From contig MCFH01000009.1 of NCBI GenBank assembly GCA_002104945.1, positions 1,141,782 through 1,205,781 on the forward strand: 64,000 nt of DNA. The letters run 5' to 3'. The position numbers and the translations under genes are program-made. Positions 4,949-64,000 of this stretch are shown in pieces. The stretch comes from Piromyces finnis finn (Eukaryota; Fungi; Neocallimastigomycota). Within the stretch, counting starts at the first letter, position 1. Each line of letters begins with the position of its first letter. Under the pieces are notes generated by a model, which was given only the letters and a program-made list of their open reading frames with translations, was not told the origin of the DNA and did no database searches.

Positions 4949-5431
4949 ATAATTAATTTTTTATTTTTTTTTTTTTTTTTTTAATCACCATAATTATTTA
5001 AAGAATTAATAGCAATAAAAAAAGAAATATGTGTTAATATGCTTTTTTATGAAAAAAAAGGTTTTGAAATGTTTATTATTATTTATATACAAAAATATGT
5101 TATTATCTGGTGAATAATATTATTTAATTAATAATATATTAAATTTTTCTTTATACAATATATCTTTATATTATCTATAAGTTATTATTTTTGACTTTTA
5201 ATTAAATAAATATACTTTATTCTTTTTTTTTTAAGCATTATTTTGATTTATTATCTCAATATATATAAATTTTTAAAATACAAGTTTTCTTATTTTCTTA
5301 ATTATTTATTCATTTATACAACTTAGAAAGTAATAAATAAAACAAAATATTACAAAACAAATAAAATATATATTAATAACATTTTAAAAGAAAATGTGTT
5401 AAGTTTATTTACTTAAACTAAATTGTTTTTG

Positions 5432-45700: not shown

Positions 45701-48700
45701 ATCAAAAATGAAAACAATATCTGAAAAGAAAATTGAGAGAACTAACAAGATTTTTGATGCTAATTTATTTGATACCAATGAAAAACTAAAGTCTAATTAT
45801 ACAATTGAATTTGTAGGATTTAAGACAGGAAATGGAAAACAATTACCAAAATTATCAAAAGAAGCAATTAGTAATGCTAAAAAGATACTAGGAGATGATT
45901 TATTTGATGATATAGAAATGAAAACTGGAAATAATGAATTGAAATCGGAATCAATTGAATTTGTAGGATTTAAGACAGGACATGGAAAACAATTACCAAA
46001 ATTATCAAAAGAAGCAATTAGTAATGCTAAAAAAATACTAGGAGATGATTTATTTGATGATATAGAAATGAAAACTGAAAATAATGAATTGAAATCAGAA
46101 TCAACTGAATTTGTAGGATTTAAGACAGGAAATGGAAAACAATTACCAAAATTATCAAAAGAAGCAATTAGTAATGCTAAAAAGATACTAGGAGATGATT
46201 TATTTGATGATATAGAAATGAAAACTGGAAATAATGAATTGAAATCGGAATCAATTGAATTTGTAGGATTTAAGACAGGAAATGGAAAACAATTACCAAA
46301 ATTATCAAAAGAAGCAATTAATGATGCCAGAAAGATACTAGGAGATGATTTATTTGATGATATAGAAATGAAAACTGAAAATAATGAATTGAAATCAGAA
46401 TCAACTGAATTTGTAGGATTTAAGACAGGAAATGGAAAACAATTACCAAAATTATCAAAAGAAGCAATTAATAATGCTAAAAAGATACTAGGAGATGATT
46501 TATTTGATGATATAGAAATGAAAACTGAAAATAATGAATTGAAATCAGAATCAACTGAATTTGTAGGATTTAAGACAGGAAATGGAAAACAATTACCAAA
46601 ATTATCAAAAGAAGCAATTAGTAATGCTAAAAAGATACTAGGAGATGATTTATTTGATGATATAGAAATGAAAACTGGAAATAATGAATTGAAATCGGAA
46701 TCAATTGAATTTGTAGGATTTAAGACAGGAAATGGAAAACAATTACCAAAATTATCAAAAGAAGCAATTAATGATGCCAGAAAGATACTAGGAGATGATT
46801 TATTTGATGATATAGAAATGAAAACTGAAAATAATGAATTGAAATCAGAATCAACTGAATTTGTAGGATTTAAGACAGGAAATGGAAAACAATTACCAAA
46901 ATTATCAAAAGAAGCAATTAATGATGCCAGAAAGATACTAGGAGATGATTTATTTGATGATATAGAAATGAAAACTGAAAATAATGAATTGAAATCAGAA
47001 TCAACTGAATTTGTAGGATTTAAGACAGGAAATGGAAAACAATTACCAAAATTATCAAAAGAAGCAATTAGTAATGCTAAAAAGATACTAGGAGATGATT
47101 TATTTGATGATATAGAAATGAAAACTGAAAATAATGAATTGAAATCAGAATCAACTGAATTTGTAGGATTTAAGACAGGAAATGGAAAACAATTACCAAA
47201 ATTATCAAAAGAAGCAATTAATGATGCCAGAAAGATACTAGGAGATGATTTATTTGATGATATAGAAATGAAAACTGAAAATAATGAATTGAAATCAGAA
47301 TCAACTGAATTTGTAGGATTTAAGACAGGAAATGGAAAACAATTACCAAAATTATCAAAAGAAGCAATTAATAATGCTAAAAATATACTAGGAGATGATT
47401 TATTTGATGATATAGAAATGAAAACTGAAAATAGGGAATCGAAACTTGGATCAATGCGATATATAAATAATATTAATAATCAGAAGGAAGCCATTAAACA
47501 AAGATCTAAGAAAATCATTATAGGTAATTATAATATAATAAATAATAGATGAAAATTTAATAATTTAAATTAATATTAAAATTTGTTTAATTACAATATT
47601 TTATATATAGAAAATAATACCCCAAAACCAGTAATAAATCAATCTATAAAAATTATTAATAATAAAATATTTAAGAGAGTTTGTAATAATAATAAAGAAA
47701 ATGTATATAACGAAAATGAAAAAAATCAAAAGGATAAAAGTAATTTGAAGAGGAATAAATTGAAAGAAAATAATATTAATAATTTTTCAAAAAGATATAT
47801 CAGCAACAAAAAAAGCTCACTTAATAAAAATTTTAATGATAATAATGACGATATCATAAAACCATTACATACTATTAACAAAAATAATAGTAATATATTG
47901 AAACCAAATTCTGTATTACCGTATGAATTATATATATATAATTTATATAGATAAGAAAAATTATTAATATATTATTAAATTAATAATTATATTTTATTAA
48001 TATATACATATTAATTATTATCTTTAATATAAAAAGGAAAACATATAAAATCAACAACAACAACAATAATAATAATAATAATGATAATAATAAAGAAATT
48101 CTAAAACAGATTATTGGAGTGAGCGTAAATAATAAAATATCTCGACTATTGAACAAAAAGAAATTATTAAGTAATAGACCATTTAAATCGCCGTTAATAG
48201 TTAAACCTATAGAGAATTCATCACTTCAAGATAATATTAATATTAATACTAATAATCAACAAAATAAATTAATAAAGGATAAAAATTGGATTGATATAAA
48301 AAAATATGGTAATTATTGGCAACTAAAAATAAAAATAATAATTAAAAATGAAGTGAATATTTATTTATTTTTTTTTTTTTTTTTTTTTTTTTTTATTTTA
48401 TTTTAAGAAAATAAAAGATCATTAGCAGAAATATTTAGATTTTTACCTCAAAACTTCTCACAAAAGCATATCGAAAAAATATTGTACGGAATTATTAATA
48501 ATAAAAATTATAATAAAGTTGTATCAATACTAATTAAAAATAACATTATAATTTAGATGTAAAGATATTGCAATAATGAATCCACAAATAGCTTTGGATT
48601 ATCGTTTTAAACTCAATAATACTGAAAGTTGGGGAAGTAAAGAAGCATACGAAGAATTAAAGAAATATAATGTTAATACAAATATTGCAACAAAAGATTG

Positions 48701-51700
48701 GGTTGATAATCATTATAAATGGATTATTTGGAAAATAGCTTCAATGGTTCGTACAGAAAATTCTTTGTATGAAGAATATTGGAATAAAGAAAAAATAATA
48801 GAACAACTTCTTTATAGGTATAGTAAATATATTTATTATAATTAATATATTAATAGTAATACATTTAATAACATTATATATTATATATACTAGATATAAT
48901 AAAGAAAATAACTTAAGAAAACACTCTGCATTAAAATTAATAATTGAAAGGGATAATATATCCACAAAATATATGATTTTATGTGTATCAAATATTATAA
49001 TGAATAAGAAGAATGAAAATGGTATATTTTAATTTATAAGAAATTATTAACTCTAAATAAATGAATATAATAATAAAATTAAATATTTATTATAGATAAT
49101 GAAAATGAAACTACAAAAGAACATGAAATATATTTAGAGCTAACTGATGGATGGTATTCAATTAATGCTCAAATTGATAATATTTTACAAGATGCTGTTA
49201 AAGATAAGAAAATTTTCATTGGTCAAAAACTTTGTATTTCTGGTGCTAAATTAATTGGTTCAAATGACCCATTACCTGTTCTTGAGGTTAATGATGCTGT
49301 AAGATTAAATTTAGTTGCTAATAGTACAAGAATTGCTAAATGGGATACTAAATTAGGCTATCAAAATTATAAATCTTTTAAAATTTCCTTAAACTACATT
49401 CAACCATTTGGAGGTCAAGTGTCTATGATAGATGTTATAATCATAAAAAAATATTCTATATGTTATTCTGAAAAGATGAACAATGGTTCTTATATACTTA
49501 GAAATCAGTTTGAAGAAGAAATAGAGGAGGAAATTTTAAATAATATGAAAATGAAACAGTTTCAAAATGAAATCGATAATTATAATAAATTAAGTGAAAA
49601 TAAAAGTAAAAAAATAAAGAACTCAAGAAAATTAACAATGAAAGAACTTGAAAATTTGTCAAATGGAGAAGATTTATATGAAGAAATGGAAAAATATGCA
49701 GATACTTATTATTTTCTAAATATATTGTCAGAATATCAAAGAAGAATATTGAATGAATTTATTAATGAAAAGAAAACAATAGAATTCGAAAATATCAAAA
49801 ATGACTTTTTGAAGAAAACAAATAAAATTAATCATAAAAGAAATGTTTCCTCATTTCTTCGATTAAAGATATGTGATTATTTCACTAAAAATAAAAAAAA
49901 CTATGAAAAAAAATACGTTTACTTAACAATTTGGAATCCAAATATAAAAATTATTAATAATATAAATGAAGGGAAAAGATATCAAATATTTTATCCAAAA
50001 GCTAAACCAGAAAATAATGAAATGAAATATTCATTATCTTTAAACAATTTAAATAATATTTTTGAAAAACCAATTGAAGATGAAATTGTTAAAAATACAC
50101 TTTATAAACCAAGAGAGTTAATGCCATTTAACAGCTTTGCATCTTTAACGATAGGATCAGAAATTGATGTAGTAGCTTATTGTTTAGGTATATAAATAAT
50201 ATATATATATTATCATTATTCAATCATTAAATGTTTTTAAAAAATATTTTCATTATTATATTAGCAATACATGATCTTGATTCAGATAATAACAAAATGC
50301 CATTAAAATACATATGTATTTTATCTGACAATACTCAAAACTTTTTAATTGTTGAAGTTACATCAAATGTGAAATTACTAAGAAAACGTCAAAATGTAAG
50401 CATTTAAAGAACAATATATTATTAAAAATTATGACTCAAAATGCATGTTATATATGTATATTAATATTTATTGTTTTTAATATATTATAGTTTCAAGAAC
50501 CTATTTTTATCAGAAATTTAAAAATCAAAGGGTTTAACGAATCATGCAATTTATTTATAAGTTGTATTAATATGTACACTGAGGTTAAATCACATTCTTC
50601 TTTAAATTACGAAAAAGAAAAATACGAGATATTGAAAAATTGGTCAAAAACGTATGTAGTATATAAATTATAATTTTTAATTTATAAAGAAAAATAATTT
50701 TAAATATTGAGTTCTCATGTTTTATTTTTTAAATATATATTTATATAAAAAAATGTGCTCTATTAATATACTTTATTAATAATTAATATTAATAATTAAG
50801 TAATCAAAAAGATTTTAATGATCAAAAGCTAAAATCTGAAGAAATTTTAAATTATATTATTAACCCTTATGCCTCAAAGCCAATAATCAATAATAATATA
50901 TATAATATTAATTCAATATCACCACCAGTTCCAAAAAGAAATATGTTATTACATTCCTTTAACAATAATGAAAATAATAAAAGGATTTTAAATAAAATAC
51001 CAGAATTACTCGATATTGCAAAACTAGCATCTAATACTAATGAACAACTTGATTTGATAAATAAAATTGATAATCGTTTATATAATTGTCCTATTAATAA
51101 TCCATTAAAGCATAACTATAATAACAATAATTGTATTAATAATAATGCTATTAAAAATTATTTGCATTCATATCCATCCAAAATTCCAATTCAAGATAAT
51201 AATGAATATTTAGAAAGAGATATTCATTTAAAAGAATGGATTCGGAAAAGTATAAATTGTGGAACCTTCTCTATATATGCACATCTAATAGATCTTAATA
51301 TAAATTATAATAACCCAGAAAAATATATAAATTTTAAGAGTTCTCTTACCTCATCAAGTATTCATAATTCTCCAAACAAACCACAATTTACATTAATTTT
51401 TGACAATGGAGAAAATACTTGGAATATAGAATTAAGCGAAGAACAATTCTTATCCTTTATTTCAATGAAAAACGGAGAGAAATCGGGATGTTATCATAGT
51501 ATTGATGATAATTTCTATAAAGATGTTCTCATATATTTAAATAAATTGTTCAAGAAACAATCATTAAATATTTCATTTGATCCATTCAAAAATGATACCC
51601 ACAAGAAGAAATTAAATTCTATAATTAATGAATTATTAAAGGAAAATGATATCTCACCTAAAAATCAAATAATTACAGTAAGTTTTTTTAATGATATCAT

Positions 51701-52571
51701 TGATCAACTATATTATTATGGTATATTAGATATTGAGAATGCTGAAGTATATGAAGAAGATAAAGACTTTGAATATAACACTATCCCAATGAATCAGGAT
51801 ACTTCTTCACTCATTTCATATAAAGAAAATAAAGATGGAATTTTAAATAAAAACGAGCCAAAGGAATCGAATCAAACAAATATAAAAATAGAAAACAATA
51901 ATAGACCTCTTTGGTGGAATGAAGGTGTTTTAAATGCTTTTGAGAGTTTTAGAATAAAACTTTGGGATTCTTATCAAATAAGAAATAAAATGTCAAAAGA
52001 TGAATTTATTGTATGGACAATAAGATTTGGGAAAATTATAAAAGATGAAGATTTATGGAATAAATTTAATTCCTGGATTCAAGAGAAAAAAAGGTTCCCT
52101 GAAGAAACATCTTCCACTATTAATACAGAAATCTATAATAAGAATTATAAAAAAGGAACTAATGAAAATGAAAACATCTTTGAACGTGATGATTTTGAAG
52201 TATTTGAATCTTTTATGAGTGAACTATTATTACAGTATATCAATAATAATGATACAATACAAACAAATACAATACCACCATTGCTATTATTCTATGAAAA
52301 GGAATGGGACTATTTGATCAAATTAATTATTCAATGGTTAAAAGAATCTGAATTTAAAGTAAGTTTATAACTTAAAAAATAATATTTTATTAATTTAGAA
52401 TATATATCTAATAATAAATGTATTTAAAATATTTTTATTTTTTTATAGTTAATCCTATTAAAAGAAAAAACAATACAATCTCTATCAAATAATCTTATAC
52501 ATAAATTTGTTTCAATTCATAGAATTAATAATGACAACTATTTAAACAAACTTTTAAATGAGCTAACTTAA
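42756..52571 (+). CDS. BRCA2: BRCA2 orthologue, about 13 exons and roughly 2,900 aa: long disordered N-terminus, 11 BRC repeats, helical domain, OB1-tower-OB2-OB3, and a C-terminal extension
   Basis: The track ORFs at 43117, 44274, 47583, 48119, 48576, 49419 and 50943 appear to belong to one spliced gene. I checked the in-frame junctions 42893/43000, 44053/44167, 47523/47611, 50651/50801 and 52359/52449. DNA-binding-domain motifs: KDWVDNHYKWIIWKIASM, IIEQLLYRYNKE..LRKHSALKLIIERD, YLELTDGWYSINAQID, KIFIGQKLCISGAKL, LVANSTRIAKWDTKLG, and GGQVSMIDVIIIKKY. Confidence 0.93.
45804..47432 (+). repeat. Coding tandem array, 11 x 150 bp (50 aa) BRC repeats
   Basis: The unit EFVGFKTGNGKQLPKLSKEAISNAKKILGDDLFDDIEMKTENNELKSEST recurs with an exact 150-bp period (for example AATTACCAAAATTATCAAAA at 45841, 45991, ... 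47341). Confidence 0.97.
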
Positions 52572-53106: not shown

Positions 53107-56100
53107 TTAAGCGTCAATTTCACCAGACATGATGACTAATTTTAATATAATAATAATATATATAATAATAAAAATTATTAATACTGAAAAATATTATATA
53201 TGTTTAATTAATATACTTACCATCATCAATCTTTAAAATCATTTTAACAAGTTGAGTAGCTAATAAATATTGTTGACGTTTTGAAATCAATGGATCGTAG
53301 ACAAATTGATCACGCATATCTATAAAATAATTTTAACAAAATTTTATTAATATTAATTTATTAATAAAAAGTAATTAATAGAGCATACCATTGTTTCCAG
53401 TTAAGTTACAGTCAACACCAAGACGTGGGTTATTTTCCTTAACTTGTCTTGATTGGACTTCGGCTAAAGTTTCAATTGGAGAAAGACCACTGTTTTCAGC
53501 TAATGCTAATGGAACACTTTCTAAAGCAGAAGCAAATGATCTCATAGCGTATTGTTCAATAGATGATATCTATTATTTAAAAAATTCAATTTTTTTTTAA
53601 AATGTTAATATTCATTATTAAATTTAGAAACATATAAATAAAAATAATAAAATAAAATCATTGTGTATAAAAATTAATATTTACTTCATCAGCATGCTTT
53701 TGAATTTCAAGGGCACAAGAAATTTCAGCAGCACCACCACCGTAAACAATACGATTATCACGAACAAGGTTTCTAACAGCACAAATTGCATCATTCAAAC
53801 TACGTTTGGCTTCATCAATAATCTATTAAATTAATTATAAACATGTTTTAATAAACAAATCATTTATATTTCTATTTGCAATATTTTAATTATTTGAAAA
53901 TTACCATTTTATTACCACCTCTAACGAAAATGGTAACTGCTCTGGTATTAGCACATTCTTCAATAACAAGCATTCTATCTTTAGTAGTACCAAAACTAAT
54001 TTCACGAACAATACCAGCGTGACCTAATTTTTCTGGTGATAATTCTTCAAATCTTGGAACGATACGACCGTTAGTAGCAATAGCGATTAACTTAATTATT
54101 TAAAAGCATATCAATTTAAAAAAAAATAAATAAATAAATTAAATTCATTATTAATATTTATTAATTGTATGGAAAAAAAAATAATATAATAAAATATTGT
54201 TATTTTTATAAATATATAATGATACATACTTCAATTTCTGGTCCACCAACCCATCTACATGCTGGTAAATTGTTTTGATATAATAAGTGATTAGCTTCAT
54301 CATCGAAACCCCATTGACAAATAGCAAGATTTGCACCACAGTCCTTAACTTGTTTAACCATTTCTTCAAACTTTTCCATTTCATAACTTTGAAGTTTTTT
54401 GTATTCTTCAACACTTGTAATATCTAACTTATGTTTAGTCTTTGGCTTTGGTGGTTCGAAAGGACAAGTAAGAATAGCAATTTTAGCATCCTTAATTTCC
54501 TTTGGCATTTGTGGGTGAGACATATCTTTGTCAATAATAACACCATATACTAATCTTGAATCAACTAAAGAACCACCAAGTTTACCATCGATTTTAATTA
54601 ATTCGAAATCAACATCTTTTCTTTCTAAATCAGCAACAGATAAAACAGCATCAACAGCCATTTTAGCAAATTGATCGTGGCACTTAGAAACACTTTATCC
54701 ATAATGATTTTACGAAATAGTAATATTATATTAGGATATTTTTAAAATATTTTAATATGATATAATATTTTGTTAAAATAATGAAGTTCATATAATGATA
54801 TTTATAATAATTTATATTAAACTTTAATTTTCAGTTGTTATTATTATTTAATTTTTTTGCTGTAATATTTATTATTTTTTATGAAATTTAGATTTTACTA
54901 GTAATTTTTAATATAATAATACTACTTACATCTTAGAACCTAAAGAGGTCTTAGCAGTTTTGAATAAGTTTTCGGTATGATCCTTATCAAATTCAATAAC
55001 ATCAGAAACCTTTTCTAAATGTTGAACTGCAATGTTACAAGCTCTTTCGTAACCATCGGCAATACGGATTGGGTGAATACCACGATCTAATAAAGCTTCA
55101 GCTTGTTCTAAAAGAGCCCCAGCTAAAACTATTATAATATTCCAAACAATAAATATTTCATAATATTAGTGCAAATATTATTAATAGCTGTAACTGAAAA
55201 TAGTATTTAAATACATATATTACAAATGTTTAGGAAATAACTAATTATACTTACCAACAACACCAGTTGTACCATCACCGATTTCATCATCTTGACTCTT
55301 TGATAATTGAACTAATAATTTAGCAATTTGATGTTCAACTTCCATTTGATCAAGAATAGTAGCACCATCATTAGTTACAGTAATATCACCATCTGGAGAA
55401 ATAAGAATCTTATCAAGACCTTTTAATATATTTAAAAAAATAGTTTAAAATTTACTAATTTAATTTCATATATATATAAATAACAAAATATATATTAAAT
55501 TCTATACCTTTTGGACCAAGTGAACTTTTTACAATATTAGCGACAGTTTTAGCAGCTAAGATATGAGACTGTAAATTGAAATATATATGTAAATAGAATA
55601 TTTTAAAAAAAAATGAATAATTACTTTTCCATTTTCTTATTATTCAATCTTTTGCAATTTCTGTATATACCTTCATAGCATCAAGTCCAGTAAGTCTAGT
55701 CTTTTTACCTTGTTCTCTAATAATGATGAATGGTCTTCCATATTCATCAGTAGCTATATGTAAATAATGTTAACATTCCAATATATTTTAGTATTTTTAT
55801 AGGCATAAATAAACAGTATAATATTTTATATTTAATTAAAAACTTCAGCAAGATTAAAAATTAAATTTGAATTTTTATATGTGATCTCTTTAAAATTTAC
55901 AGATTATTATATTATAATATTAATTATTTTTGTCTTATTTTTGATTGAATCTAAATTTCGCATTTTATCTTAAGTTTTTTTCTTTTTTTTTTTTTTTTTT
56001 TTTTAATTTTACTTTATTTCATTTATTCAAATGTTAATTACAAGAGAGAAAATAATATTTTTTTTTCTCAATGATGAACTTATTATATTTTTTAATTCTC

Positions 56101-57381: not shown

Positions 57382-58977
57382 GCATTTAAAAAATATTAAA
57401 TTTAGCTAAAATTTTAGTAGCCGTGTAACATGAAATATATAATTTTAATAATAAGTTTTTATAAAATAAAAAAGAAAAATTTAAGAAATTTGTAATTTTC
57501 CGTTAAAAAACTAGGTCAAAATACTTTTTATATTTTAATACTAAATAATTATCACATAAAAATTTTATAAAATAAAATGTTTCAAAAAAAAAATTCAATA
57601 ATACAATAACTTTAATTATATATTTTTTTTTTCAGGAAATAATTGTTTTAATATTTTAGATGTTACATTGAAACTTAAATAATACCTATATATGATATAT
57701 TTTAACATTAATTTATAAATAATTTATAATAAATAAGTAATAAAAAAAACTATATTAAATTAACTATTTGTTGGTCATCAATTTTCCATATATATATTAA
57801 TAATAATAATTTTATTTTAATTTATACAATGGAGTAAGAATTATAATATTAATATCATTAATATTAGATAATAATATTATTATTACTAAGTACCTTTTTT
57901 TTTTCAAGACAAAAAATAATGAAAAAACTATTTTTATTCCATAAAATAATATTAATATAGCATTATGTTTTTTATATATTTTATATATAATTTCTACATT
58001 ATTATATTTGGTTTAATTCATTATTTATTTCATTTGATTATTTAAAATATTAATTAAAGTTTTTTTTTTAAAATTAAAGTTTTTAAACATTTTTTTTATT
58101 ATTATTTGTTATAATTTTTTAGTTATAAAAGAAAAAAAAAAGTATATAATGGGATTATATCATAAAAATAACTTTATTTTATACTAATTATTTTTTAATA
58201 TTCAATATAATGGAATATCAAGTTTCTTATCTTTTCTCTTTTTCAGTTTCTTCACGTTTTTAAGTTATTTATTTATATTTTATTATTCTTGAAATTTTTA
58301 TCTTTAAAAATTTTATGCTATTAAAAATTTATTTTAAATAAATAAAAATATACTGTATACTTTCAAACATTTTATTTATTATTATATTAATAGGAAATTT
58401 TTGTTTTTCACTATATATATCCTAATTCCATTACTCCTAAAGAAGTTAAATAATTCACATTTTATTGATATTCTTTTGGATTATAATAATATATATATTA
58501 TTTTAATTTTTATTATATATATTATATATGGAAATAGTTTTATGCTTAAAAAAACAGCTTCTGCTAAATAATTGTAAATATTTCAAAAAAAATAAAAAAG
58601 GAAAAACAAGAAAATGAACAATAGTATATATATGTTGAATTTGAAATAATAGTTATTGATATTAAAAATAAAATATATGATAAATTACTTATATAAAAAG
58701 GAAGAATAATGAAAATAAATAAATAATAACAATAATAATTAATCAAATGAAATTTTGAAATTTATAAAAACAAAAATTAATTTAAAAATAATATTTATAA
58801 TAGATAAATTTTGTTAACTTATAAATTAATTCAAAATTTATTTAATTTAACATATTACAAATACCTATTTTCATAAATATATAAAAGGAAAAATATTAAT
58901 AATATCTATTATCTTTATTACTATTATTATTTATTTATTTACTTATTTTTTTTTAATATTAATAATAAATAAAGAAA

Positions 58978-61900
58978 ATGTCTTTTGAAAACGTCTATCG
59001 ATATACTACAGAAAGTATTAATTTATGTAATGATGTATTGAACTTTTATCAAAAGAAAAAAGATATAGAATTTCAATTTTCCCAATCATTATGTAAGCTT
59101 AAAAAAAATATCATATTTTAATATATAAAAATGTTTAAATTTATATAGTACAAATTTATATTTTATATAATAAAGTAATTTTTTAAATATATATTAAACC
59201 ATAATAAATATTAAAACTAGCAAATCTATGTCAAACATATAAAAGTCAATATTATAATATAATAAATCAACAACAGAATACCCCAGAATTACAAATAAAA
59301 TCTCATTTATTACAAAAGTAAAGATAAAAAATAACATTTCTTAATAAACATTTTTATATGGATTTAATATATTTAATACTTGAATGCATATACATAATAA
59401 TTATTATTTAGCACATTATGGAAAACATTCATAAATCAAATTGAGGAGTTTGACCAAATTGCTAGATATCATGTATTTTTTTTTTTTACTATTAAGTTAA
59501 CTATTATTAAAAAGAAAATATAGTAAAAAATATATATATATATATAATAATAAACACCAAAATAAAATAGAGAACATTGGCAGTATCTTATGAAGATTCA
59601 ATTATTAATCCTTTATATAATGATATCGAAGATATGGAGACAAGTCAAAAAAAGGTAGTTATTTTTTTTTGGAAATTATAATATTTATAAAACGAACTTT
59701 GTATTTATTTTAAAATAAAATAAAGATCGTAGATAATGGATTAGAAAAAGTTAAAACTTTACAAAATGCTTATACAGAACTGAAAAGAGTAAAAATAAAA
59801 TAATAATATTATAAATTTAAATTTTTGTGAGATGGTATTAATAAATATTAATATATGATTTTCTTTTATTTTATATAATATATCAAACAAATTTAATTTA
59901 TTTTATTATTATTACAAATATAATTTTTTTGTCACACCAAAACCAAAAATTAGAAAAAAGAAATGTATAAGGAAGCCCAAGATGCTGCAAAAGAAGCTGC
60001 TGAAGCACATAATAAAGGATTAAATACATATAATATAAAAGATAAAGAAATGGAAAAAGTAAATATTTAGAATAAATAAACCAAACATTTTTAAATCCAC
60101 TTACAAAATAGAGTTTTAAATTGTATAATTATATAATATTTAATAATAATTTTAACAGTTGACCGCTAAATATCAATTATGTTTAGAAAAAGTAAATTAT
60201 GCAAAAGATGGCGTCAGTATTTGTGAAAAAATATGTAAAAAACACCAAGAACAATATTATTTAAGTGATCTACCAGTAATCCTTGAAGTAATTGATTACA
60301 TTATGTTAATAAATTAACTTATTGTTAATTTTATAACTATACTAATTTATACTGTTCACTTTTCATATAAATTTGTTTAATTTAAAATTATTATTATTAC
60401 TATTAATATTATTTATATTATAATAATAATAAAATGGCAATAGAATTTAAAGTCAAAAGAAGAAGAAAGAAATTATAATTTAAAAAAATTATTCACTGAA
60501 GCAAATAAAATCGAGAAGTTGTCTATTCAATATATTATTAATATTACTAATTCAGTTGCCGAAGGATTAAAAGATATCGATGTTCCAGGAGATATTGATA
60601 ATTTCACTCAACAATATGTAACTACAATATTTAGTTTATATTTTTGATATTAATTTCATTATTAATCTAATAAATAACATAAATATAAATTAGATGTATT
60701 CATTTAATCATGATTCAGATATATCTGTTCGTAGTTTAATTAATCCCGAAAAGGCTGGAAGAATGAATGTACATAAAGATTCAGGATCAATGGAATGGAA
60801 AACAAGATACTTTGTATTAATGTCTAAACATTTTCGATTATATTGTTTTGAAAGTGAAGATGTACATAATAAAAATAAAATATATAATTATATAGATATA
60901 AATGATAATTAAATATACTAAAAAATAATTACTAAAATTATATAATATTAATTATAATATTAATTATAATGAAATATATTTTTATTTTTTAATATATTTT
61001 ATAACTGGGTAATAATAAAATATATTCTCAAATATATTTATTTATTCATTTTATTATCGCAAAAAAACTAGTCTGTAAAACCAAAAGAAATTATTGATTT
61101 AAATGATGTATCAATTCATTTATTGGATGATAGCTATTTTAACATGCCTAATTCATTTCAAATTGTAGTATATAATAATATTATGGATAAAACAAGAAGA
61201 AAAGCATTTGCTTATTATCTTGTAGCAGAAACTGCTACTGATAGAGAGGAATGGTTTACACGTATTCGTGATATCGCTTATTGTTGTCAAAGATGTAATA
61301 TCACTAAAATGATTTTATATGAATATAATAAAAATATCAAAGGATATAATAATAATAATCAAGCACAAGCTCTTAAAAAAAAATCAAGTGGAGTATCTGA
61401 TGTAAGTTATTCAAGAGGTAATAGTCATAATTTAGACTGTAATTGTACAAATAAAAACTTAAGCACCAGTATTATAAGTAATGGTAGTAATATCCCTTTA
61501 TCCCTTAATAATAATAATGAAAACAATGAAAATAATACAATATTAACAGAACAATTTAAAAAAACATTTGAACCTGAACTATCTGAAGAAAAAAAAGACA
61601 AATCATTGATTACATTTGCAGAAGCATTGGATTGTCAATTAGTATTTTTAAATGATGAAGATAATATAGAATCAGTATCTGAAGCTGCAAAGAGGTCATC
61701 ACCAGCTTCAAATAACTGTTCCCAATATTCACTTAATAAAACCTCGATAAAATCACCACGTAATTCTCAAATTATATTACAAAATTCGCACGAAGAGCAA
61801 CAAAATAATAATATGAAAAGTTCATCATTTGCACAACGATTCTACGAAAATACTGTCAAAGATAAAAAATTAAACAGATATAGTACTAGTTTTCTTGAAT

Positions 61901-64000
61901 CACCAAAATCAAGTATAAATAATAATTTAAAAAGAGAAATTAGTATAGACATTAATGGAAATAATGGTAGTAATTTAAAAAAAGATTCATCCTTCTTTAA
62001 AATGATTAAATCTAATACTAAAAATACAAATATAAATAATATAGTTAGTTCAGTTTCTGAAGGAAGTATTGATAATCTTTCATGTTCACTATCTAAGCAA
62101 AATTGTCGTTTCTCAATTATAAGTAATGTCTCACCTTCTAAAATGTCACAATACTCAATGTCTACTCATGTTAACACTAATACATCTGAAGATAATTTGA
62201 ATAATATGTTTAATTACCTAAATGATAAAAATAAATATAGAATTAATCGTAATATTAAATTATGCATATTGGAAGCCAGAAATCTCTATCCAAATGAAAA
62301 GAAAAAGAATATAGAGTCATATGCTTATATATTTTTTGATGATATTGTTCAAGCAAAAACATCTAAACAATTAGGATCAAATCCATTCTGGGGTGAAGAA
62401 TTTAACTTTGAGCATGTTTTACCATGTTTAGATAATATTCACATTATTATATGTCAACAACATCGCGTTAGTAATGATTCTGAAATAGGACATATCATAA
62501 TTCCTATTAATAAACTACATAGTAACAAAAAAATTGAGGAATGGATACCAATAATGCAATTAAATTCAAATAATGAAAATTTTAATGCTTCTATTAGAAT
62601 AGGTATTACTCTAATAGATGAACATATATTACCAATAGAAGATTACAATGAATTTATTGATTATGTTTTCCAACCTTCACTAGAACCTGTCATTCGACTA
62701 GGAAATGTTGTTCAGCAAAGAGATGAATTCTCCAAAACAATTCTATATATATTAATGGATAGACAAAAAGAAGTTGATGGAATAAAAACATTAGTGTCAT
62801 TAGAAATCAAAAATACAGATGATCCTAATATTATTTTTAGAGGTAATTCTTTAACAACTAAAATTATTGATCAATATATGAAATTAATTGGTAATCGTTA
62901 TTTGAATAACACCTTGAAAAGGCAAGTACAAAATGTATATGCCACAAAAGAATCATGTGAGGTAGATCCATCTAAAATAGATAAATCAGAGGATATCAAA
63001 AAACATTGGAAAAAATTATTAGGATATGTGAACAACTTTTGGGATGCTATTCGACAAAGTGTAAATAAATGCCCATCAAAACTAAAGGAAATCTTCAATT
63101 TCACAAAAATGGAAGTAGCAAAAACTTTTGAAAATGAGAATACAGTTCAATATTCATCGATCAGTGGTTTTATATTTTTACGTTTCTTTTGCCCCGCTAT
63201 TCTATCACCAAAATTATTCGGTTTAGCTGAACAACATCCAGATCCAACCACCGCAAGAACTTTAACCTTAATTGCAAAAATTCTGCAAAACTTAGCAAAT
63301 TTAACCGAATTTGCTAGTAAAGAACCACATATGAGTGAATCCAATAATTTTATTAAAAATCATATCAATGAAATGAAATGCTTCATTGACGCCATATCTA
63401 TTTCCCCGGGAAAACAAGAAGAAAATTCAGATGTTGACTTTGACTTACGAACGCAATGTGAAAAATTCTATCGATTCTGTAGAAGTAATAGTAGATCCTG
63501 TTTCAATTCAAAAGATCCAGATGACAAAAAATTATTAGACATCATTCAAAATATATCCAATATACATATTAAATACAGAGAAGATCTATTGAATTATCAA
63601 ATATCTTCGGACGATAAATCAATTAGAAAAATATTAAATAATTCTGAAACATCGCTTTACGATTTAATTAATGAAGAAGAAAGTAATGGAGAAGCTAAAA
63701 TGTGTAGTAATAATGGGTCTATTAAAAAAGAACTAAGTAACTTTATTATAGATGAATATACCAAGAATGAAATAGATGATTCATTAAAGAGCATTATATA
63801 TACTATTAGAAGATTCTCAGCACAATATAATAAAAAAGATAATACCAAACGACAATATAATACCATCACTAAAATGACAGGACTAAATCAACATTTACCA
63901 TATATGGAAGATATTTTCAATACTAGTAATAGATCATCAATTAATAATGGAAATATTAGCAACGACATTTATAAATTAGAAGAAAATGATAGTAAAAGTA
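58978..64000 (+). CDS. F-BAR(FCH)-PH-C2-RasGAP multidomain protein, 3'-partial; the last exon (61072 to the window end) is not in the ORF track
   Basis: F-BAR: FYQKKKDIEFQFSQSL...TLWKTFINQIEEF...IINPL...LPVILENLKSKEEER. PH: EWKTRYFVL...LYCFESED|SVKPKEIIDL...NSFQIV...YYLVAETATDREEWFTRI. C2: IKLCILEARNL...KTSKQLGSNPFWGEEFNF. RasGAP: IFRGNSLTTKIIDQYMK, SGFIFLRFFCPAILSPKLF, RTLTLIAKILQNLAN. Confidence 0.9.

What the first reader, a model, noticed from the sequence alone, without database searches (positions are those of the whole stretch)
58978..63400. F-BAR domain fused to PH-C2-RasGAP
Nine short exons encode a full F-BAR domain and lead in frame into PH, a long Ser/Asn linker, C2 and a RasGAP domain with the FLRFFCPAILSP signature. 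F-BAR is usually paired with RhoGAP, SH3, kinase or muHD domains (Rgd1/Rga7, srGAP, Cdc15, FES). PH-C2-RasGAP is the p120GAP/SynGAP/DAB2IP core. I do not recall this combination being described. It would couple membrane-curvature sensing to Ras/Rap shut-off, for example at rhizoid tips, endocytic sites or zoospore cleavage furrows.
Basis: partly seen in the sequence, partly recalled or inferred. Interest (0 to 1): 0.7.

Follow-up and report, generated by a model that had tools for sequence, protein, structure and literature searches.

The report
F-BAR–PH–C2–RasGAP gene, expressed and conserved
The window holds a real, spliced and transcribed gene of an anaerobic gut fungus that joins a membrane-binding F-BAR domain to a Ras-inactivating enzyme; the combination is unstudied in the papers searched, but it already sits in public protein sets of dozens of zoosporic fungi and two unicellular relatives of animals, so it is an old family, not a one-off.

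Summary
Ten GT..AG exons on the + strand (58978 to the window end) encode one protein. It has a full F-BAR domain, a PH domain split by an intron, a 326-residue Asn/Ser-rich linker, a C2 domain and a RasGAP domain. The arginine finger and the FLR motif are both intact.

Spliced contigs from public runs of three studies remove the introns at exactly these sites. One 4513-nt contig runs from the start codon through the GAP domain with no mismatch, so this is a single mRNA.

The gene is cut by the window end. The Anaeromyces robustus orthologue has 1519 residues, against 1308 here.

- The same domain order occurs in more than 40 species of Chytridiomycota, in Neocallimastigomycota, Gonapodya and an aphelid, and in Capsaspora and Salpingoeca.
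- The fungal and aphelid members form one clade, and a single origin of the fusion is not rejected.
- They carry automatic names such as "Ras GTPase-activating protein 1".
- I found no paper describing the fusion.

The scan also noted the same architecture on another piece of this genome (s1-186156), probably a paralogue.

The likely function is a membrane-anchored RasGAP, probably dimeric. Curvature sensing and Ras-versus-Rap preference are untested.

The parts
58978..59092 (+). Exon 1. Start codon at 58978, with an in-frame stop just upstream. First half of the FCH motif.
   Evidence: FCH 8.8e-6, profile 2-37 of 78. Spliced contigs begin at 58979.
59221..59317 (+). Exon 2 (F-BAR helix 1 end and loop). 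It is needed to keep the frame between exons 1 and 3.
   Evidence: Phase arithmetic. Junctions 59092/59221 and 59317/59412 appear in contigs of X1, X3 and X4.
59412..59472 (+). Exon 3 (F-BAR)
59571..59654 (+). Exon 4 (F-BAR)
59726..59788 (+). Exon 5 (F-BAR)
59954..60058 (+). Exon 6 (F-BAR)
60159..60287 (+). Exon 7 (F-BAR)
   Evidence: The junction 60287/60444 follows from adjacent record positions 671/672 of X1 record 1.
60444..60617 (+). Exon 8 (last long helix of the F-BAR domain)
60694..60861 (+). Exon 9. End of the F-BAR region, a short connector, and the N-terminal half of PH, with a K..WKTRYF strand 1-2 motif at 60772-60813.
   Evidence: PH profile 10-35. Junction 60617/60694 appears in X1, X3 and X4. 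Coordinates.
61072..63999 (+). Exon 10, open to the window end. It holds the PH C-terminal half (to 61275), the Asn/Ser-rich linker (61276-62253), C2 (62254-62550) and RasGAP (62782-63300).
   Evidence: Contigs cover 61072-63400 with 0 mismatches.
58978..60711 (+). F-BAR domain as a whole (residues 1-282 of P0001, introns included in the span)
   Evidence: Family profile against PDB sequences: FBP17 4.3e-26 over profile positions 20-291. AlphaFold2 model pLDDT 91.2. Foldseek: CIP4 TM 0.80/0.88, and the top 50 hits are all F-BAR structures.
62836..62850 (+). Arginine-finger motif FRGNS of the GAP domain
   Evidence: It aligns with FRATT of p120GAP. F-R-G is nearly invariant in the family.
63175..63210 (+). 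FLR signature (FLRFFCPAILSP)
   Evidence: It aligns with FLRLICPAILNP of p120GAP. F, L and R are invariant in alignment A2.

Best explanation
This is one expressed gene of an Anaeromyces-like gut fungus (Neocallimastigomycota). It encodes a RasGAP that is very likely membrane-anchored.

Its catalytic core, PH-C2-RasGAP, is most like that of p120GAP/RASA1. Where RASA1 has SH2-SH3-SH2 at the N-terminus, this protein has a complete F-BAR domain of the CIP4/FBP17 type.

Inferred mechanism:
- The F-BAR domain dimerises and lies on acidic, gently curved plasma membrane.
- The PH domain carries a basic strand 1-2 motif, and together with C2 it adds phosphoinositide or lipid contacts.
- The long disordered Asn/Ser linker tethers the GAP domain, which inserts its arginine finger into membrane-bound Ras-GTP (possibly also Rap-GTP) and switches it off locally.

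The gene belongs to an old family, conserved in zoosporic fungi, an aphelid, Capsaspora and Salpingoeca. It was not seen in the Dikarya, Mucoromycota or animal proteins listed.

Shown here: the gene structure, the single mRNA, the domain identities and fold, intact catalytic motifs, and the conservation of the architecture.

Inferred only: dimerisation, lipid binding, any curvature preference, the substrate and the cellular site.
For: Gene model and transcript:
- The model follows from the sequence and is identical to the stored gene call P0001.
- X1 record 1 is a 4513-nt contig with 0 mismatches that lacks all nine introns. X3 record 8 is spliced the same way from 58999 to 61905. X4, from another study, shows 59092/59221, 60617/60694 and 60861/61072.
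- In an 82%-identical relative, P0005 (1584 aa, all four domains) is one uninterrupted ORF on 5-kb contigs from two samples. The contig read here (L001) ends in an A-run just after the stop codon.

Domains:
- Pfam domains are in order in seven species.
- F-BAR: profile against FBP17 4.3e-26 and CIP4 8e-20; model pLDDT 91; TM up to 0.88.
- GAP domain: p120GAP 2.5e-44, SynGAP 1e-39, NF1 2e-28, with the Arg finger, FLR and K..QNLAN motifs aligned and conserved across the family.

Distribution and origin:
- A family-specific F-BAR HMM hits essentially all chytrid homologues and none of the RASA1, DAB2IP, dictyostelid, Dikarya or Mucoromycota rows.
- The fungal and aphelid members form one clade with SH-aLRT 97.
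- One clade for all F-BAR rows is not rejected, p-AU 0.205.

Precedent: in RGBARG a BAR domain places a RasGAP at the membrane.
Against: - No biochemical or localisation data exist for any member.
- The F-BAR domain has a slight net negative charge (37 K+R against 42 D+E). I could not map the charge onto the concave face.
- RGBARG's BAR domain did not sense curvature.
- Ras-versus-Rap preference cannot be read from sequence.
- The runs are labelled RNA only by guess, so the RNA origin rests on the spliced form of the contigs.
- The C-terminus lies outside the window.
Confidence: 0.8

Rival explanations
1. One reading: the F-BAR domain is a true curvature sensor or sculptor. GAP activity is therefore confined to curved sites such as endocytic pits, cleavage furrows or rhizoid tips.
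For: The closest solved relatives are FBP17 and CIP4, which I know as tubulating, endocytic F-BAR proteins. The model shows the long helical bundle typical of the fold.
Against: Many F-BAR domains, and RGBARG's BAR domain, act as flat membrane anchors or scaffolds. Nothing here measures curvature preference. The monomer model cannot give the dimer's curvature.
Confidence: 0.3
2. The main substrate is Rap or another Ras-family GTPase and not Ras, as with C2-dependent RapGAP activity in SynGAP-type proteins.
For: SynGAP is the second-best solved match at 1e-39. A C2 domain lies directly before the GAP domain. RGBARG's RasGAP domain is active on both Ras and Rap.
Against: The best match is p120GAP. 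From my own knowledge, p120GAP is Ras-directed.
Confidence: 0.25
3. This is an artefact: two neighbouring genes (an F-BAR gene and a PH-C2-RasGAP gene) were fused by gene prediction, or the spliced contigs come from a DNA retrocopy.
For: The database holds F-BAR-less entries such as P0002 and P0004. The runs are only guessed to be RNA.
Against: - The splice 60617/60694 joins the last F-BAR exon to the PH exon in contigs from two studies.
- P0004 starts inside translated intron sequence, so it is merely the big-exon ORF called on genomic DNA.
- The fusion is conserved in more than 40 species with independent gene models, and on an intronless, A-tailed contig.
Confidence: 0.02
4. The GAP domain is a non-catalytic Ras-binding scaffold, like IQGAP, and the protein acts mainly as a cytokinetic F-BAR scaffold like Cdc15, Imp2 or Hof1.
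For: Imp2, Cdc15 and Hof1 F-BAR domains are among the structural matches.
Against: The Arg finger and FLR arginine are conserved across the whole family. IQGAP1 is only a marginal match at 8.4e-6.
Confidence: 0.05

Closest known systems
p120GAP / RASA1 (SH2-SH3-SH2-PH-C2-RasGAP)
   Same: It shares the PH-C2-RasGAP order. p120GAP is the best solved match for the GAP domain (2.5e-44), with the Arg finger, FLR and K..QNLAN motifs aligned. Automatic annotation names many members 'Ras GTPase-activating protein 1'.
   Different: There are no SH2 or SH3 domains at the N-terminus; an F-BAR domain stands there instead. Capsaspora has both forms as separate genes, P0055 and P0057. The tree does not place the family inside RASA1; that node is unresolved.
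Dictyostelium RGBARG (RCC1-RhoGEF-BAR-RasGAP), PMC7416115
   Same: It is the only studied protein I found that joins a BAR-superfamily domain to a RasGAP domain. The BAR domain is needed for membrane recruitment, and the GAP restrains Ras patches.
   Different: It has a classical BAR domain, not F-BAR. It also has RCC1 and RhoGEF domains and lacks PH and C2. It is amoebozoan and not homologous as a whole.
F-BAR-RhoGAP proteins (srGAP1-3, fungal Rgd1, GMIP/HMHA1/PARG1)
   Same: They follow the same design logic: an N-terminal F-BAR domain placing a small-GTPase GAP on the membrane. srGAP2, Rgd1 and GMIP F-BAR domains are detectable matches. Some family members hit Pfam GMIP-like_FCH.
   Different: Their catalytic domain is RhoGAP, a different fold and substrate family. 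Here it is RasGAP.
CIP4 / FBP17 / TOCA-1 F-BAR domains
   Same: They are the closest F-BAR domains by sequence profile (4.3e-26 and 8e-20) and by fold (TM 0.73-0.88).
   Different: From my own knowledge, those proteins continue with HR1 and SH3 domains and act on Cdc42/WASP. Identity is only 16-18%.
Dictyostelid C2GAP1/C2GAP2 and animal SynGAP/DAB2IP
   Same: They share the C2-RasGAP core. Dictyostelid proteins are strong hits, about 1e-77.
   Different: They have no F-BAR domain (family HMM negative), and the dictyostelid proteins have no PH domain.

Membership tests
F-BAR (FCH/EFC) domain proteins | FCH motif above Pfam's gathering score | tested here: met
   P0001 scores FCH 41.3 bits against a cut-off of 27.8, E 2e-10, residues 3-92. 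Exon 1 alone scores 26.4 bits.
F-BAR (FCH/EFC) domain proteins | Homology over the whole F-BAR domain of about 270 residues, not only the FCH motif | tested here: met
   Profile A1 against FBP17 covers positions 20-291 at 4.3e-26. It also matches CIP4, GAS7, Imp2, Fes and PACSIN.
F-BAR (FCH/EFC) domain proteins | Elongated helical-bundle fold | tested here: met
   The AlphaFold2 model has pLDDT 91.2, with helices at 3-54, 72-163 and 170-260. The Foldseek top 50 hits are all F-BAR structures.
F-BAR (FCH/EFC) domain proteins | Crescent homodimer with a basic concave face that binds or tubulates membranes | not testable with these tools
The net charge is slightly negative.
RasGAP | RasGAP domain above the Pfam cut-off | tested here: met
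   138 bits against a cut-off of 28.3, profile positions 2-207 of 207.
RasGAP | Catalytic arginine finger and FLR arginine | tested here: met
   FRGNS aligns with FRATT of p120GAP, and FLRFFCPAILSP with FLRLICPAILNP. Both are invariant or nearly so in alignment A2.
RasGAP | Stimulates GTP hydrolysis by Ras | not testable with these tools
   This needs a biochemical assay.
RASA1 / p120GAP orthologues | N-terminal SH2-SH3-SH2 module | tested here: not met
   No SH2 or SH3 hit in P0001 or the fungal members. Capsaspora's true RASA1-like protein P0057 is a separate gene.
RASA1 / p120GAP orthologues | PH-C2-RasGAP core in that order | tested here: met
RASA1 / p120GAP orthologues | Phylogenetic placement inside the RASA1 clade | tested here: inconclusive
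   The RASA1 rows, the F-BAR clade, DAB2IP and the amoebozoan C2GAPs meet in an unresolved node.
Conserved F-BAR-PH-C2-RasGAP family of unicellular opisthokonts (defined here) | The same four domains in the same order, with the F-BAR domain matching the family HMM | tested here: met
   The window clusters with A. robustus (100) and Neocallimastix (96) inside the fungal clade (97).

The most novel reading that the evidence does not exclude
F-BAR-PH-C2-RasGAP may be an ancestral opisthokont Ras off-switch. It would be retained wherever cells keep wall-less amoeboid or flagellated stages (chytrids, gut fungi, aphelids, Capsaspora, choanoflagellates). It would have been lost, or replaced by the SH2-SH3 form, in animals, and lost in Dikarya and Mucoromycota. 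In this reading it confines Ras/PIP3 patches at shaped membranes during zoospore crawling, cleavage or encystment, as a fungal counterpart of Dictyostelium RGBARG.
Probability: 0.2. Interest if true: 0.6.

Novelty: new variant of a known kind. Interest (0 to 1): 0.4.

Why it matters
Ras signalling in zoosporic fungi is almost unstudied. These fungi keep animal-like actin and membrane behaviour that other fungi lost.

A conserved RasGAP whose targeting module is an F-BAR domain gives a concrete handle on where Ras is switched off in zoospores and sporangia. Spizellomyces punctatus, which can be transformed (PMC7213984, title and abstract seen), carries the family (P0013 and P0014 come from a Spizellomyces species).

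It also adds a data point on how the RASA1-type core swapped N-terminal targeting modules, F-BAR against SH2-SH3-SH2, around the origin of animals.

The finding is not a new principle. BAR-GAP and F-BAR-RhoGAP fusions are already known.

Tried and rejected
- The bacterial ORF list was useless for this intron-rich gene. I used three-frame stop-free segments instead.
- A direct exon 1 to exon 3 splice breaks the frame; the exon at 59221-59317 restores it. I considered a GC donor at 59097 and dropped it once the contigs showed 59092/59221.
- A word search with the F-BAR region alone returned only five close relatives, so it says nothing about distribution.
- A word search with the full-length alignment A2 scored only two proteins, probably because candidate slots were filled by low-complexity words. 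It did yield Salpingoeca P0121.
- F-BAR-less database entries (P0002, P0004) looked like a possible short isoform. P0004 starts in translated intron, so these are ORF calls on genomic DNA.
- Five of the six literature searches found no description of the fusion (and reading PMC4374526). The sixth, for RGBARG, gave the functional precedent.
- I did not use the exhaustive representative search or the Atlas search.
The stored protein P0001, identical to the model, was used wherever a whole protein was needed.
- I did not map the FBP17 membrane-contact residues, because I could not vouch for the residue numbers from memory.
Full report
**Setting.** The region is extremely AT-rich, with 10-30% GC. 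The nearest named relatives are Anaeromyces robustus (85% identity over the query region, residues 380-800 of the long exon, which covers C2 and the GAP domain) and Neocallimastix. The window therefore comes from an anaerobic gut fungus (Neocallimastigomycota).

**Gene model.**
- Three-frame reading and the sequence itself give ten + strand exons: 58978-59092, 59221-59317, 59412-59472, 59571-59654, 59726-59788, 59954-60058, 60159-60287, 60444-60617, 60694-60861, and 61072 to beyond 63999.
- Every intron is GT..AG, 71-210 nt long and 9-14% GC, against 21-30% GC for the exons.
- The ATG at 58978 follows an in-frame stop.
- The exon at 59221-59317 is required for the frame.
- The reading frame is still open at the last base of the window, so the gene is truncated here. 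The A. robustus orthologue P0003 has 1519 residues, against 1308 encoded in the window.

- Exon 1 alone matches FCH (8.8e-6, profile positions 2-37).
- Exon 9 matches the first half of PH, and exon 10 the second half.
- Exon 10 also matches C2 (1.8e-12) and RasGAP (5.5e-40).
The protein database returned its own gene call for this locus, P0001, and each exon translation is an exact substring of it, in order.
- P0001 scores above the Pfam cut-offs for FCH (residues 3-92), PH (304-400), C2 (727-825) and RasGAP (903-1075).
- The 326-residue stretch between PH and C2 is 18% Asn and 16% Ser.

**Is it one transcript?** Yes.
- Four public runs from three studies hold 58-68% of the sampled words of 58900-63400. 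The exons make up about 74% of that stretch.
- In X1, one 4513-nt contig lies on all ten exons with no mismatch, and its record positions run on without a gap across every junction.
- X3 has an 1809-nt contig spliced the same way from 58999 to 61905.
- X4, from a different study, shows 59092/59221, 60617/60694 and 60861/61072.
- The splice 60617/60694 joins the last F-BAR exon to the first PH exon. The PH domain itself is split by the 60861/61072 intron.
- The runs are labelled RNA only by guess, so their RNA origin is inferred from the spliced form.
- Independent support comes from P0005, an 82%-identical relative with all four domains. It is a single uninterrupted 1584-codon ORF on 5-kb contigs from two JGI samples. 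The contig read here (L001) ends in an A-run 15 nt after the stop codon.

**F-BAR.**
- Thirty-one N-termini align over about 290 residues (A1).
- The profile of that alignment finds full-length F-BAR domains among solved structures: FBP17 at 4.3e-26 (profile positions 20-291) and CIP4 at 8e-20, then GAS7, Imp2, Fes, PACSIN, Cdc15, srGAP2, FCHo2, GMIP, Hof1 and Rgd1.
- The AlphaFold2 model of residues 1-300 has pLDDT 91.2 and three long helices.
- Its 50 best Foldseek matches are all F-BAR structures. CIP4 gives TM 0.80/0.88 and FBP17 gives 0.73/0.78.
- The domain is therefore complete and of the CIP4/FBP17 type.
- Dimerisation and membrane binding are inferred, not shown. The domain's net charge is slightly negative.

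**GAP domain.**
- The best solved match is p120GAP (2.5e-44), then SynGAP (1e-39) and NF1 (2e-28).
- The finger arginine (FRGNS, 62836-62850), the FLR arginine (63175-63210) and the K..QNLAN lysine align with those of p120GAP.
- These residues are invariant or nearly invariant in a family alignment from Capsaspora to Gonapodya.
- The enzyme is therefore very probably active. Ras-versus-Rap preference cannot be read from sequence.

**Distribution.**
- The search with the C2-GAP region listed the four-domain combination in Anaeromyces, Neocallimastix and more than 30 chytrid genera. These include Spizellomyces, Geranomyces, Rhizophlyctis, Chytriomyces, Batrachochytrium and Polychytrium.
- It also listed Gonapodya, the aphelid Amoeboaphelidium and Capsaspora.
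- Domain order is the same in seven species tested. Capsaspora adds an SH3 domain after the GAP domain.
- A family HMM of the F-BAR region hits almost all chytrid homologues, including those without a Pfam FCH call. Several of these are N-terminally truncated gene models.
- The same HMM hits none of the RASA1, DAB2IP, dictyostelid, Dikarya or Mucoromycota rows.
- A further search added Salpingoeca rosetta P0121, with FCH 29-116, PH 333-414, C2 430-493, RasGAP 647-823 and a family HMM score of 1.5e-57.
- On a C2-RasGAP tree, the 51 fungal and aphelid F-BAR rows form one clade (SH-aLRT 97). There are at least two paralogue groups inside Chytridiomycetes.
- The window groups with A. robustus (100) and Neocallimastix (96).
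- Capsaspora and Salpingoeca lie nearest each other, in an unresolved node with RASA1, DAB2IP and the amoebozoan C2GAPs.
- Forcing all F-BAR rows into one clade costs 3.9 log-likelihood units, with p-AU 0.205. A single origin in the opisthokont ancestor is therefore allowed but not shown.
- Absence from other groups rests only on the 120 rows listed, so it is not established.
- The scan's notes list the same architecture on another piece of this genome (s1-186156). This is probably a paralogue; I did not check it.

**Known or new?**
- The proteins are in NCBI and UniProt as 'hypothetical', 'Rho GTPase activation protein' or 'Ras GTPase-activating protein 1'.
- Full-text searches found no paper that describes an F-BAR-RasGAP fusion.
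- The nearest functional precedent is Dictyostelium RGBARG. There a classical BAR domain is needed to bring a dual Ras/Rap GAP to the plasma membrane, but it did not recognise curvature.
- F-BAR-RhoGAP fusions (srGAP, Rgd1, GMIP) show the same design with another catalytic fold.

**Verdict.**
- The architecture is an old, conserved, unstudied family and not a novelty of this genome.
- I class it as a new variant of a known kind: a membrane-targeted GAP.
- The mechanism I commit to is a RasGAP, dimerised by its F-BAR domain, held on the plasma membrane by F-BAR plus PH plus C2. Curvature selectivity is an open sub-question.

- Read laying was given 4501 letters.
- No self-joined spliced protein was sent to any tool.

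Noticed in passing
another piece of the same genome (note s1-186156): The scan's first stage noted the same 'F-BAR fused to PH-C2-RasGAP' architecture on a different piece of this genome. This suggests a second copy, in line with the two paralogue groups seen in chytrids.
   Followed up: no
window 54209-54694 (- strand): A stop-free segment of 162 codons whose translation looks like a TCP-1/CCT chaperonin subunit. That reading is from memory and was not searched. It is probably the upstream neighbour gene, about 4 kb of 10-15% GC spacer away from the start codon.
   Followed up: no
window 49083-50192 and 50796-52367 (+ strand): Two long open segments of 370 and 524 codons lie downstream of the BRC-repeat finding at 45804-47432 (note s1-171734). 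The first contains a 'TDGWYS...' stretch that reminds me of the BRCA2 helical/OB region, so the BRCA2 gene may extend this far. This was not tested.
   Followed up: no
P0002, P0004, P0010 (database relatives): These metagenome entries appear to lack the F-BAR domain. P0004 is a prokaryote-style ORF call of the large exon on genomic DNA and begins inside translated intron sequence; the others lack the N-terminus in the same way. They could mislead architecture counts.
   Followed up: partly
window 61178 and 63159: Contigs of run X4 (a different study) differ from the window by a 2-nt omission at 61178 (depth 5.7) and by G>T at 63159 (depth 21). The omission lies inside the coding exon and would shift the frame, so it is probably an assembly error. 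The substitution may be a strain difference.
   Followed up: no
P0055 (Capsaspora) and P0121 (Salpingoeca rosetta): Two unicellular relatives of animals carry the same F-BAR-PH-C2-RasGAP order. Capsaspora has an extra SH3 domain after the GAP domain, and it also has a separate SH2/SH3 RASA1-like gene (P0057).
   Followed up: partly
L001 5018-5054: The 5-kb JGI contig encoding the relative P0005 has its stop codon at 5018-5020 and ends in a run of 21 A. That looks like a polyadenylated mRNA with a 3' UTR of only about 15 nt.
   Followed up: partly
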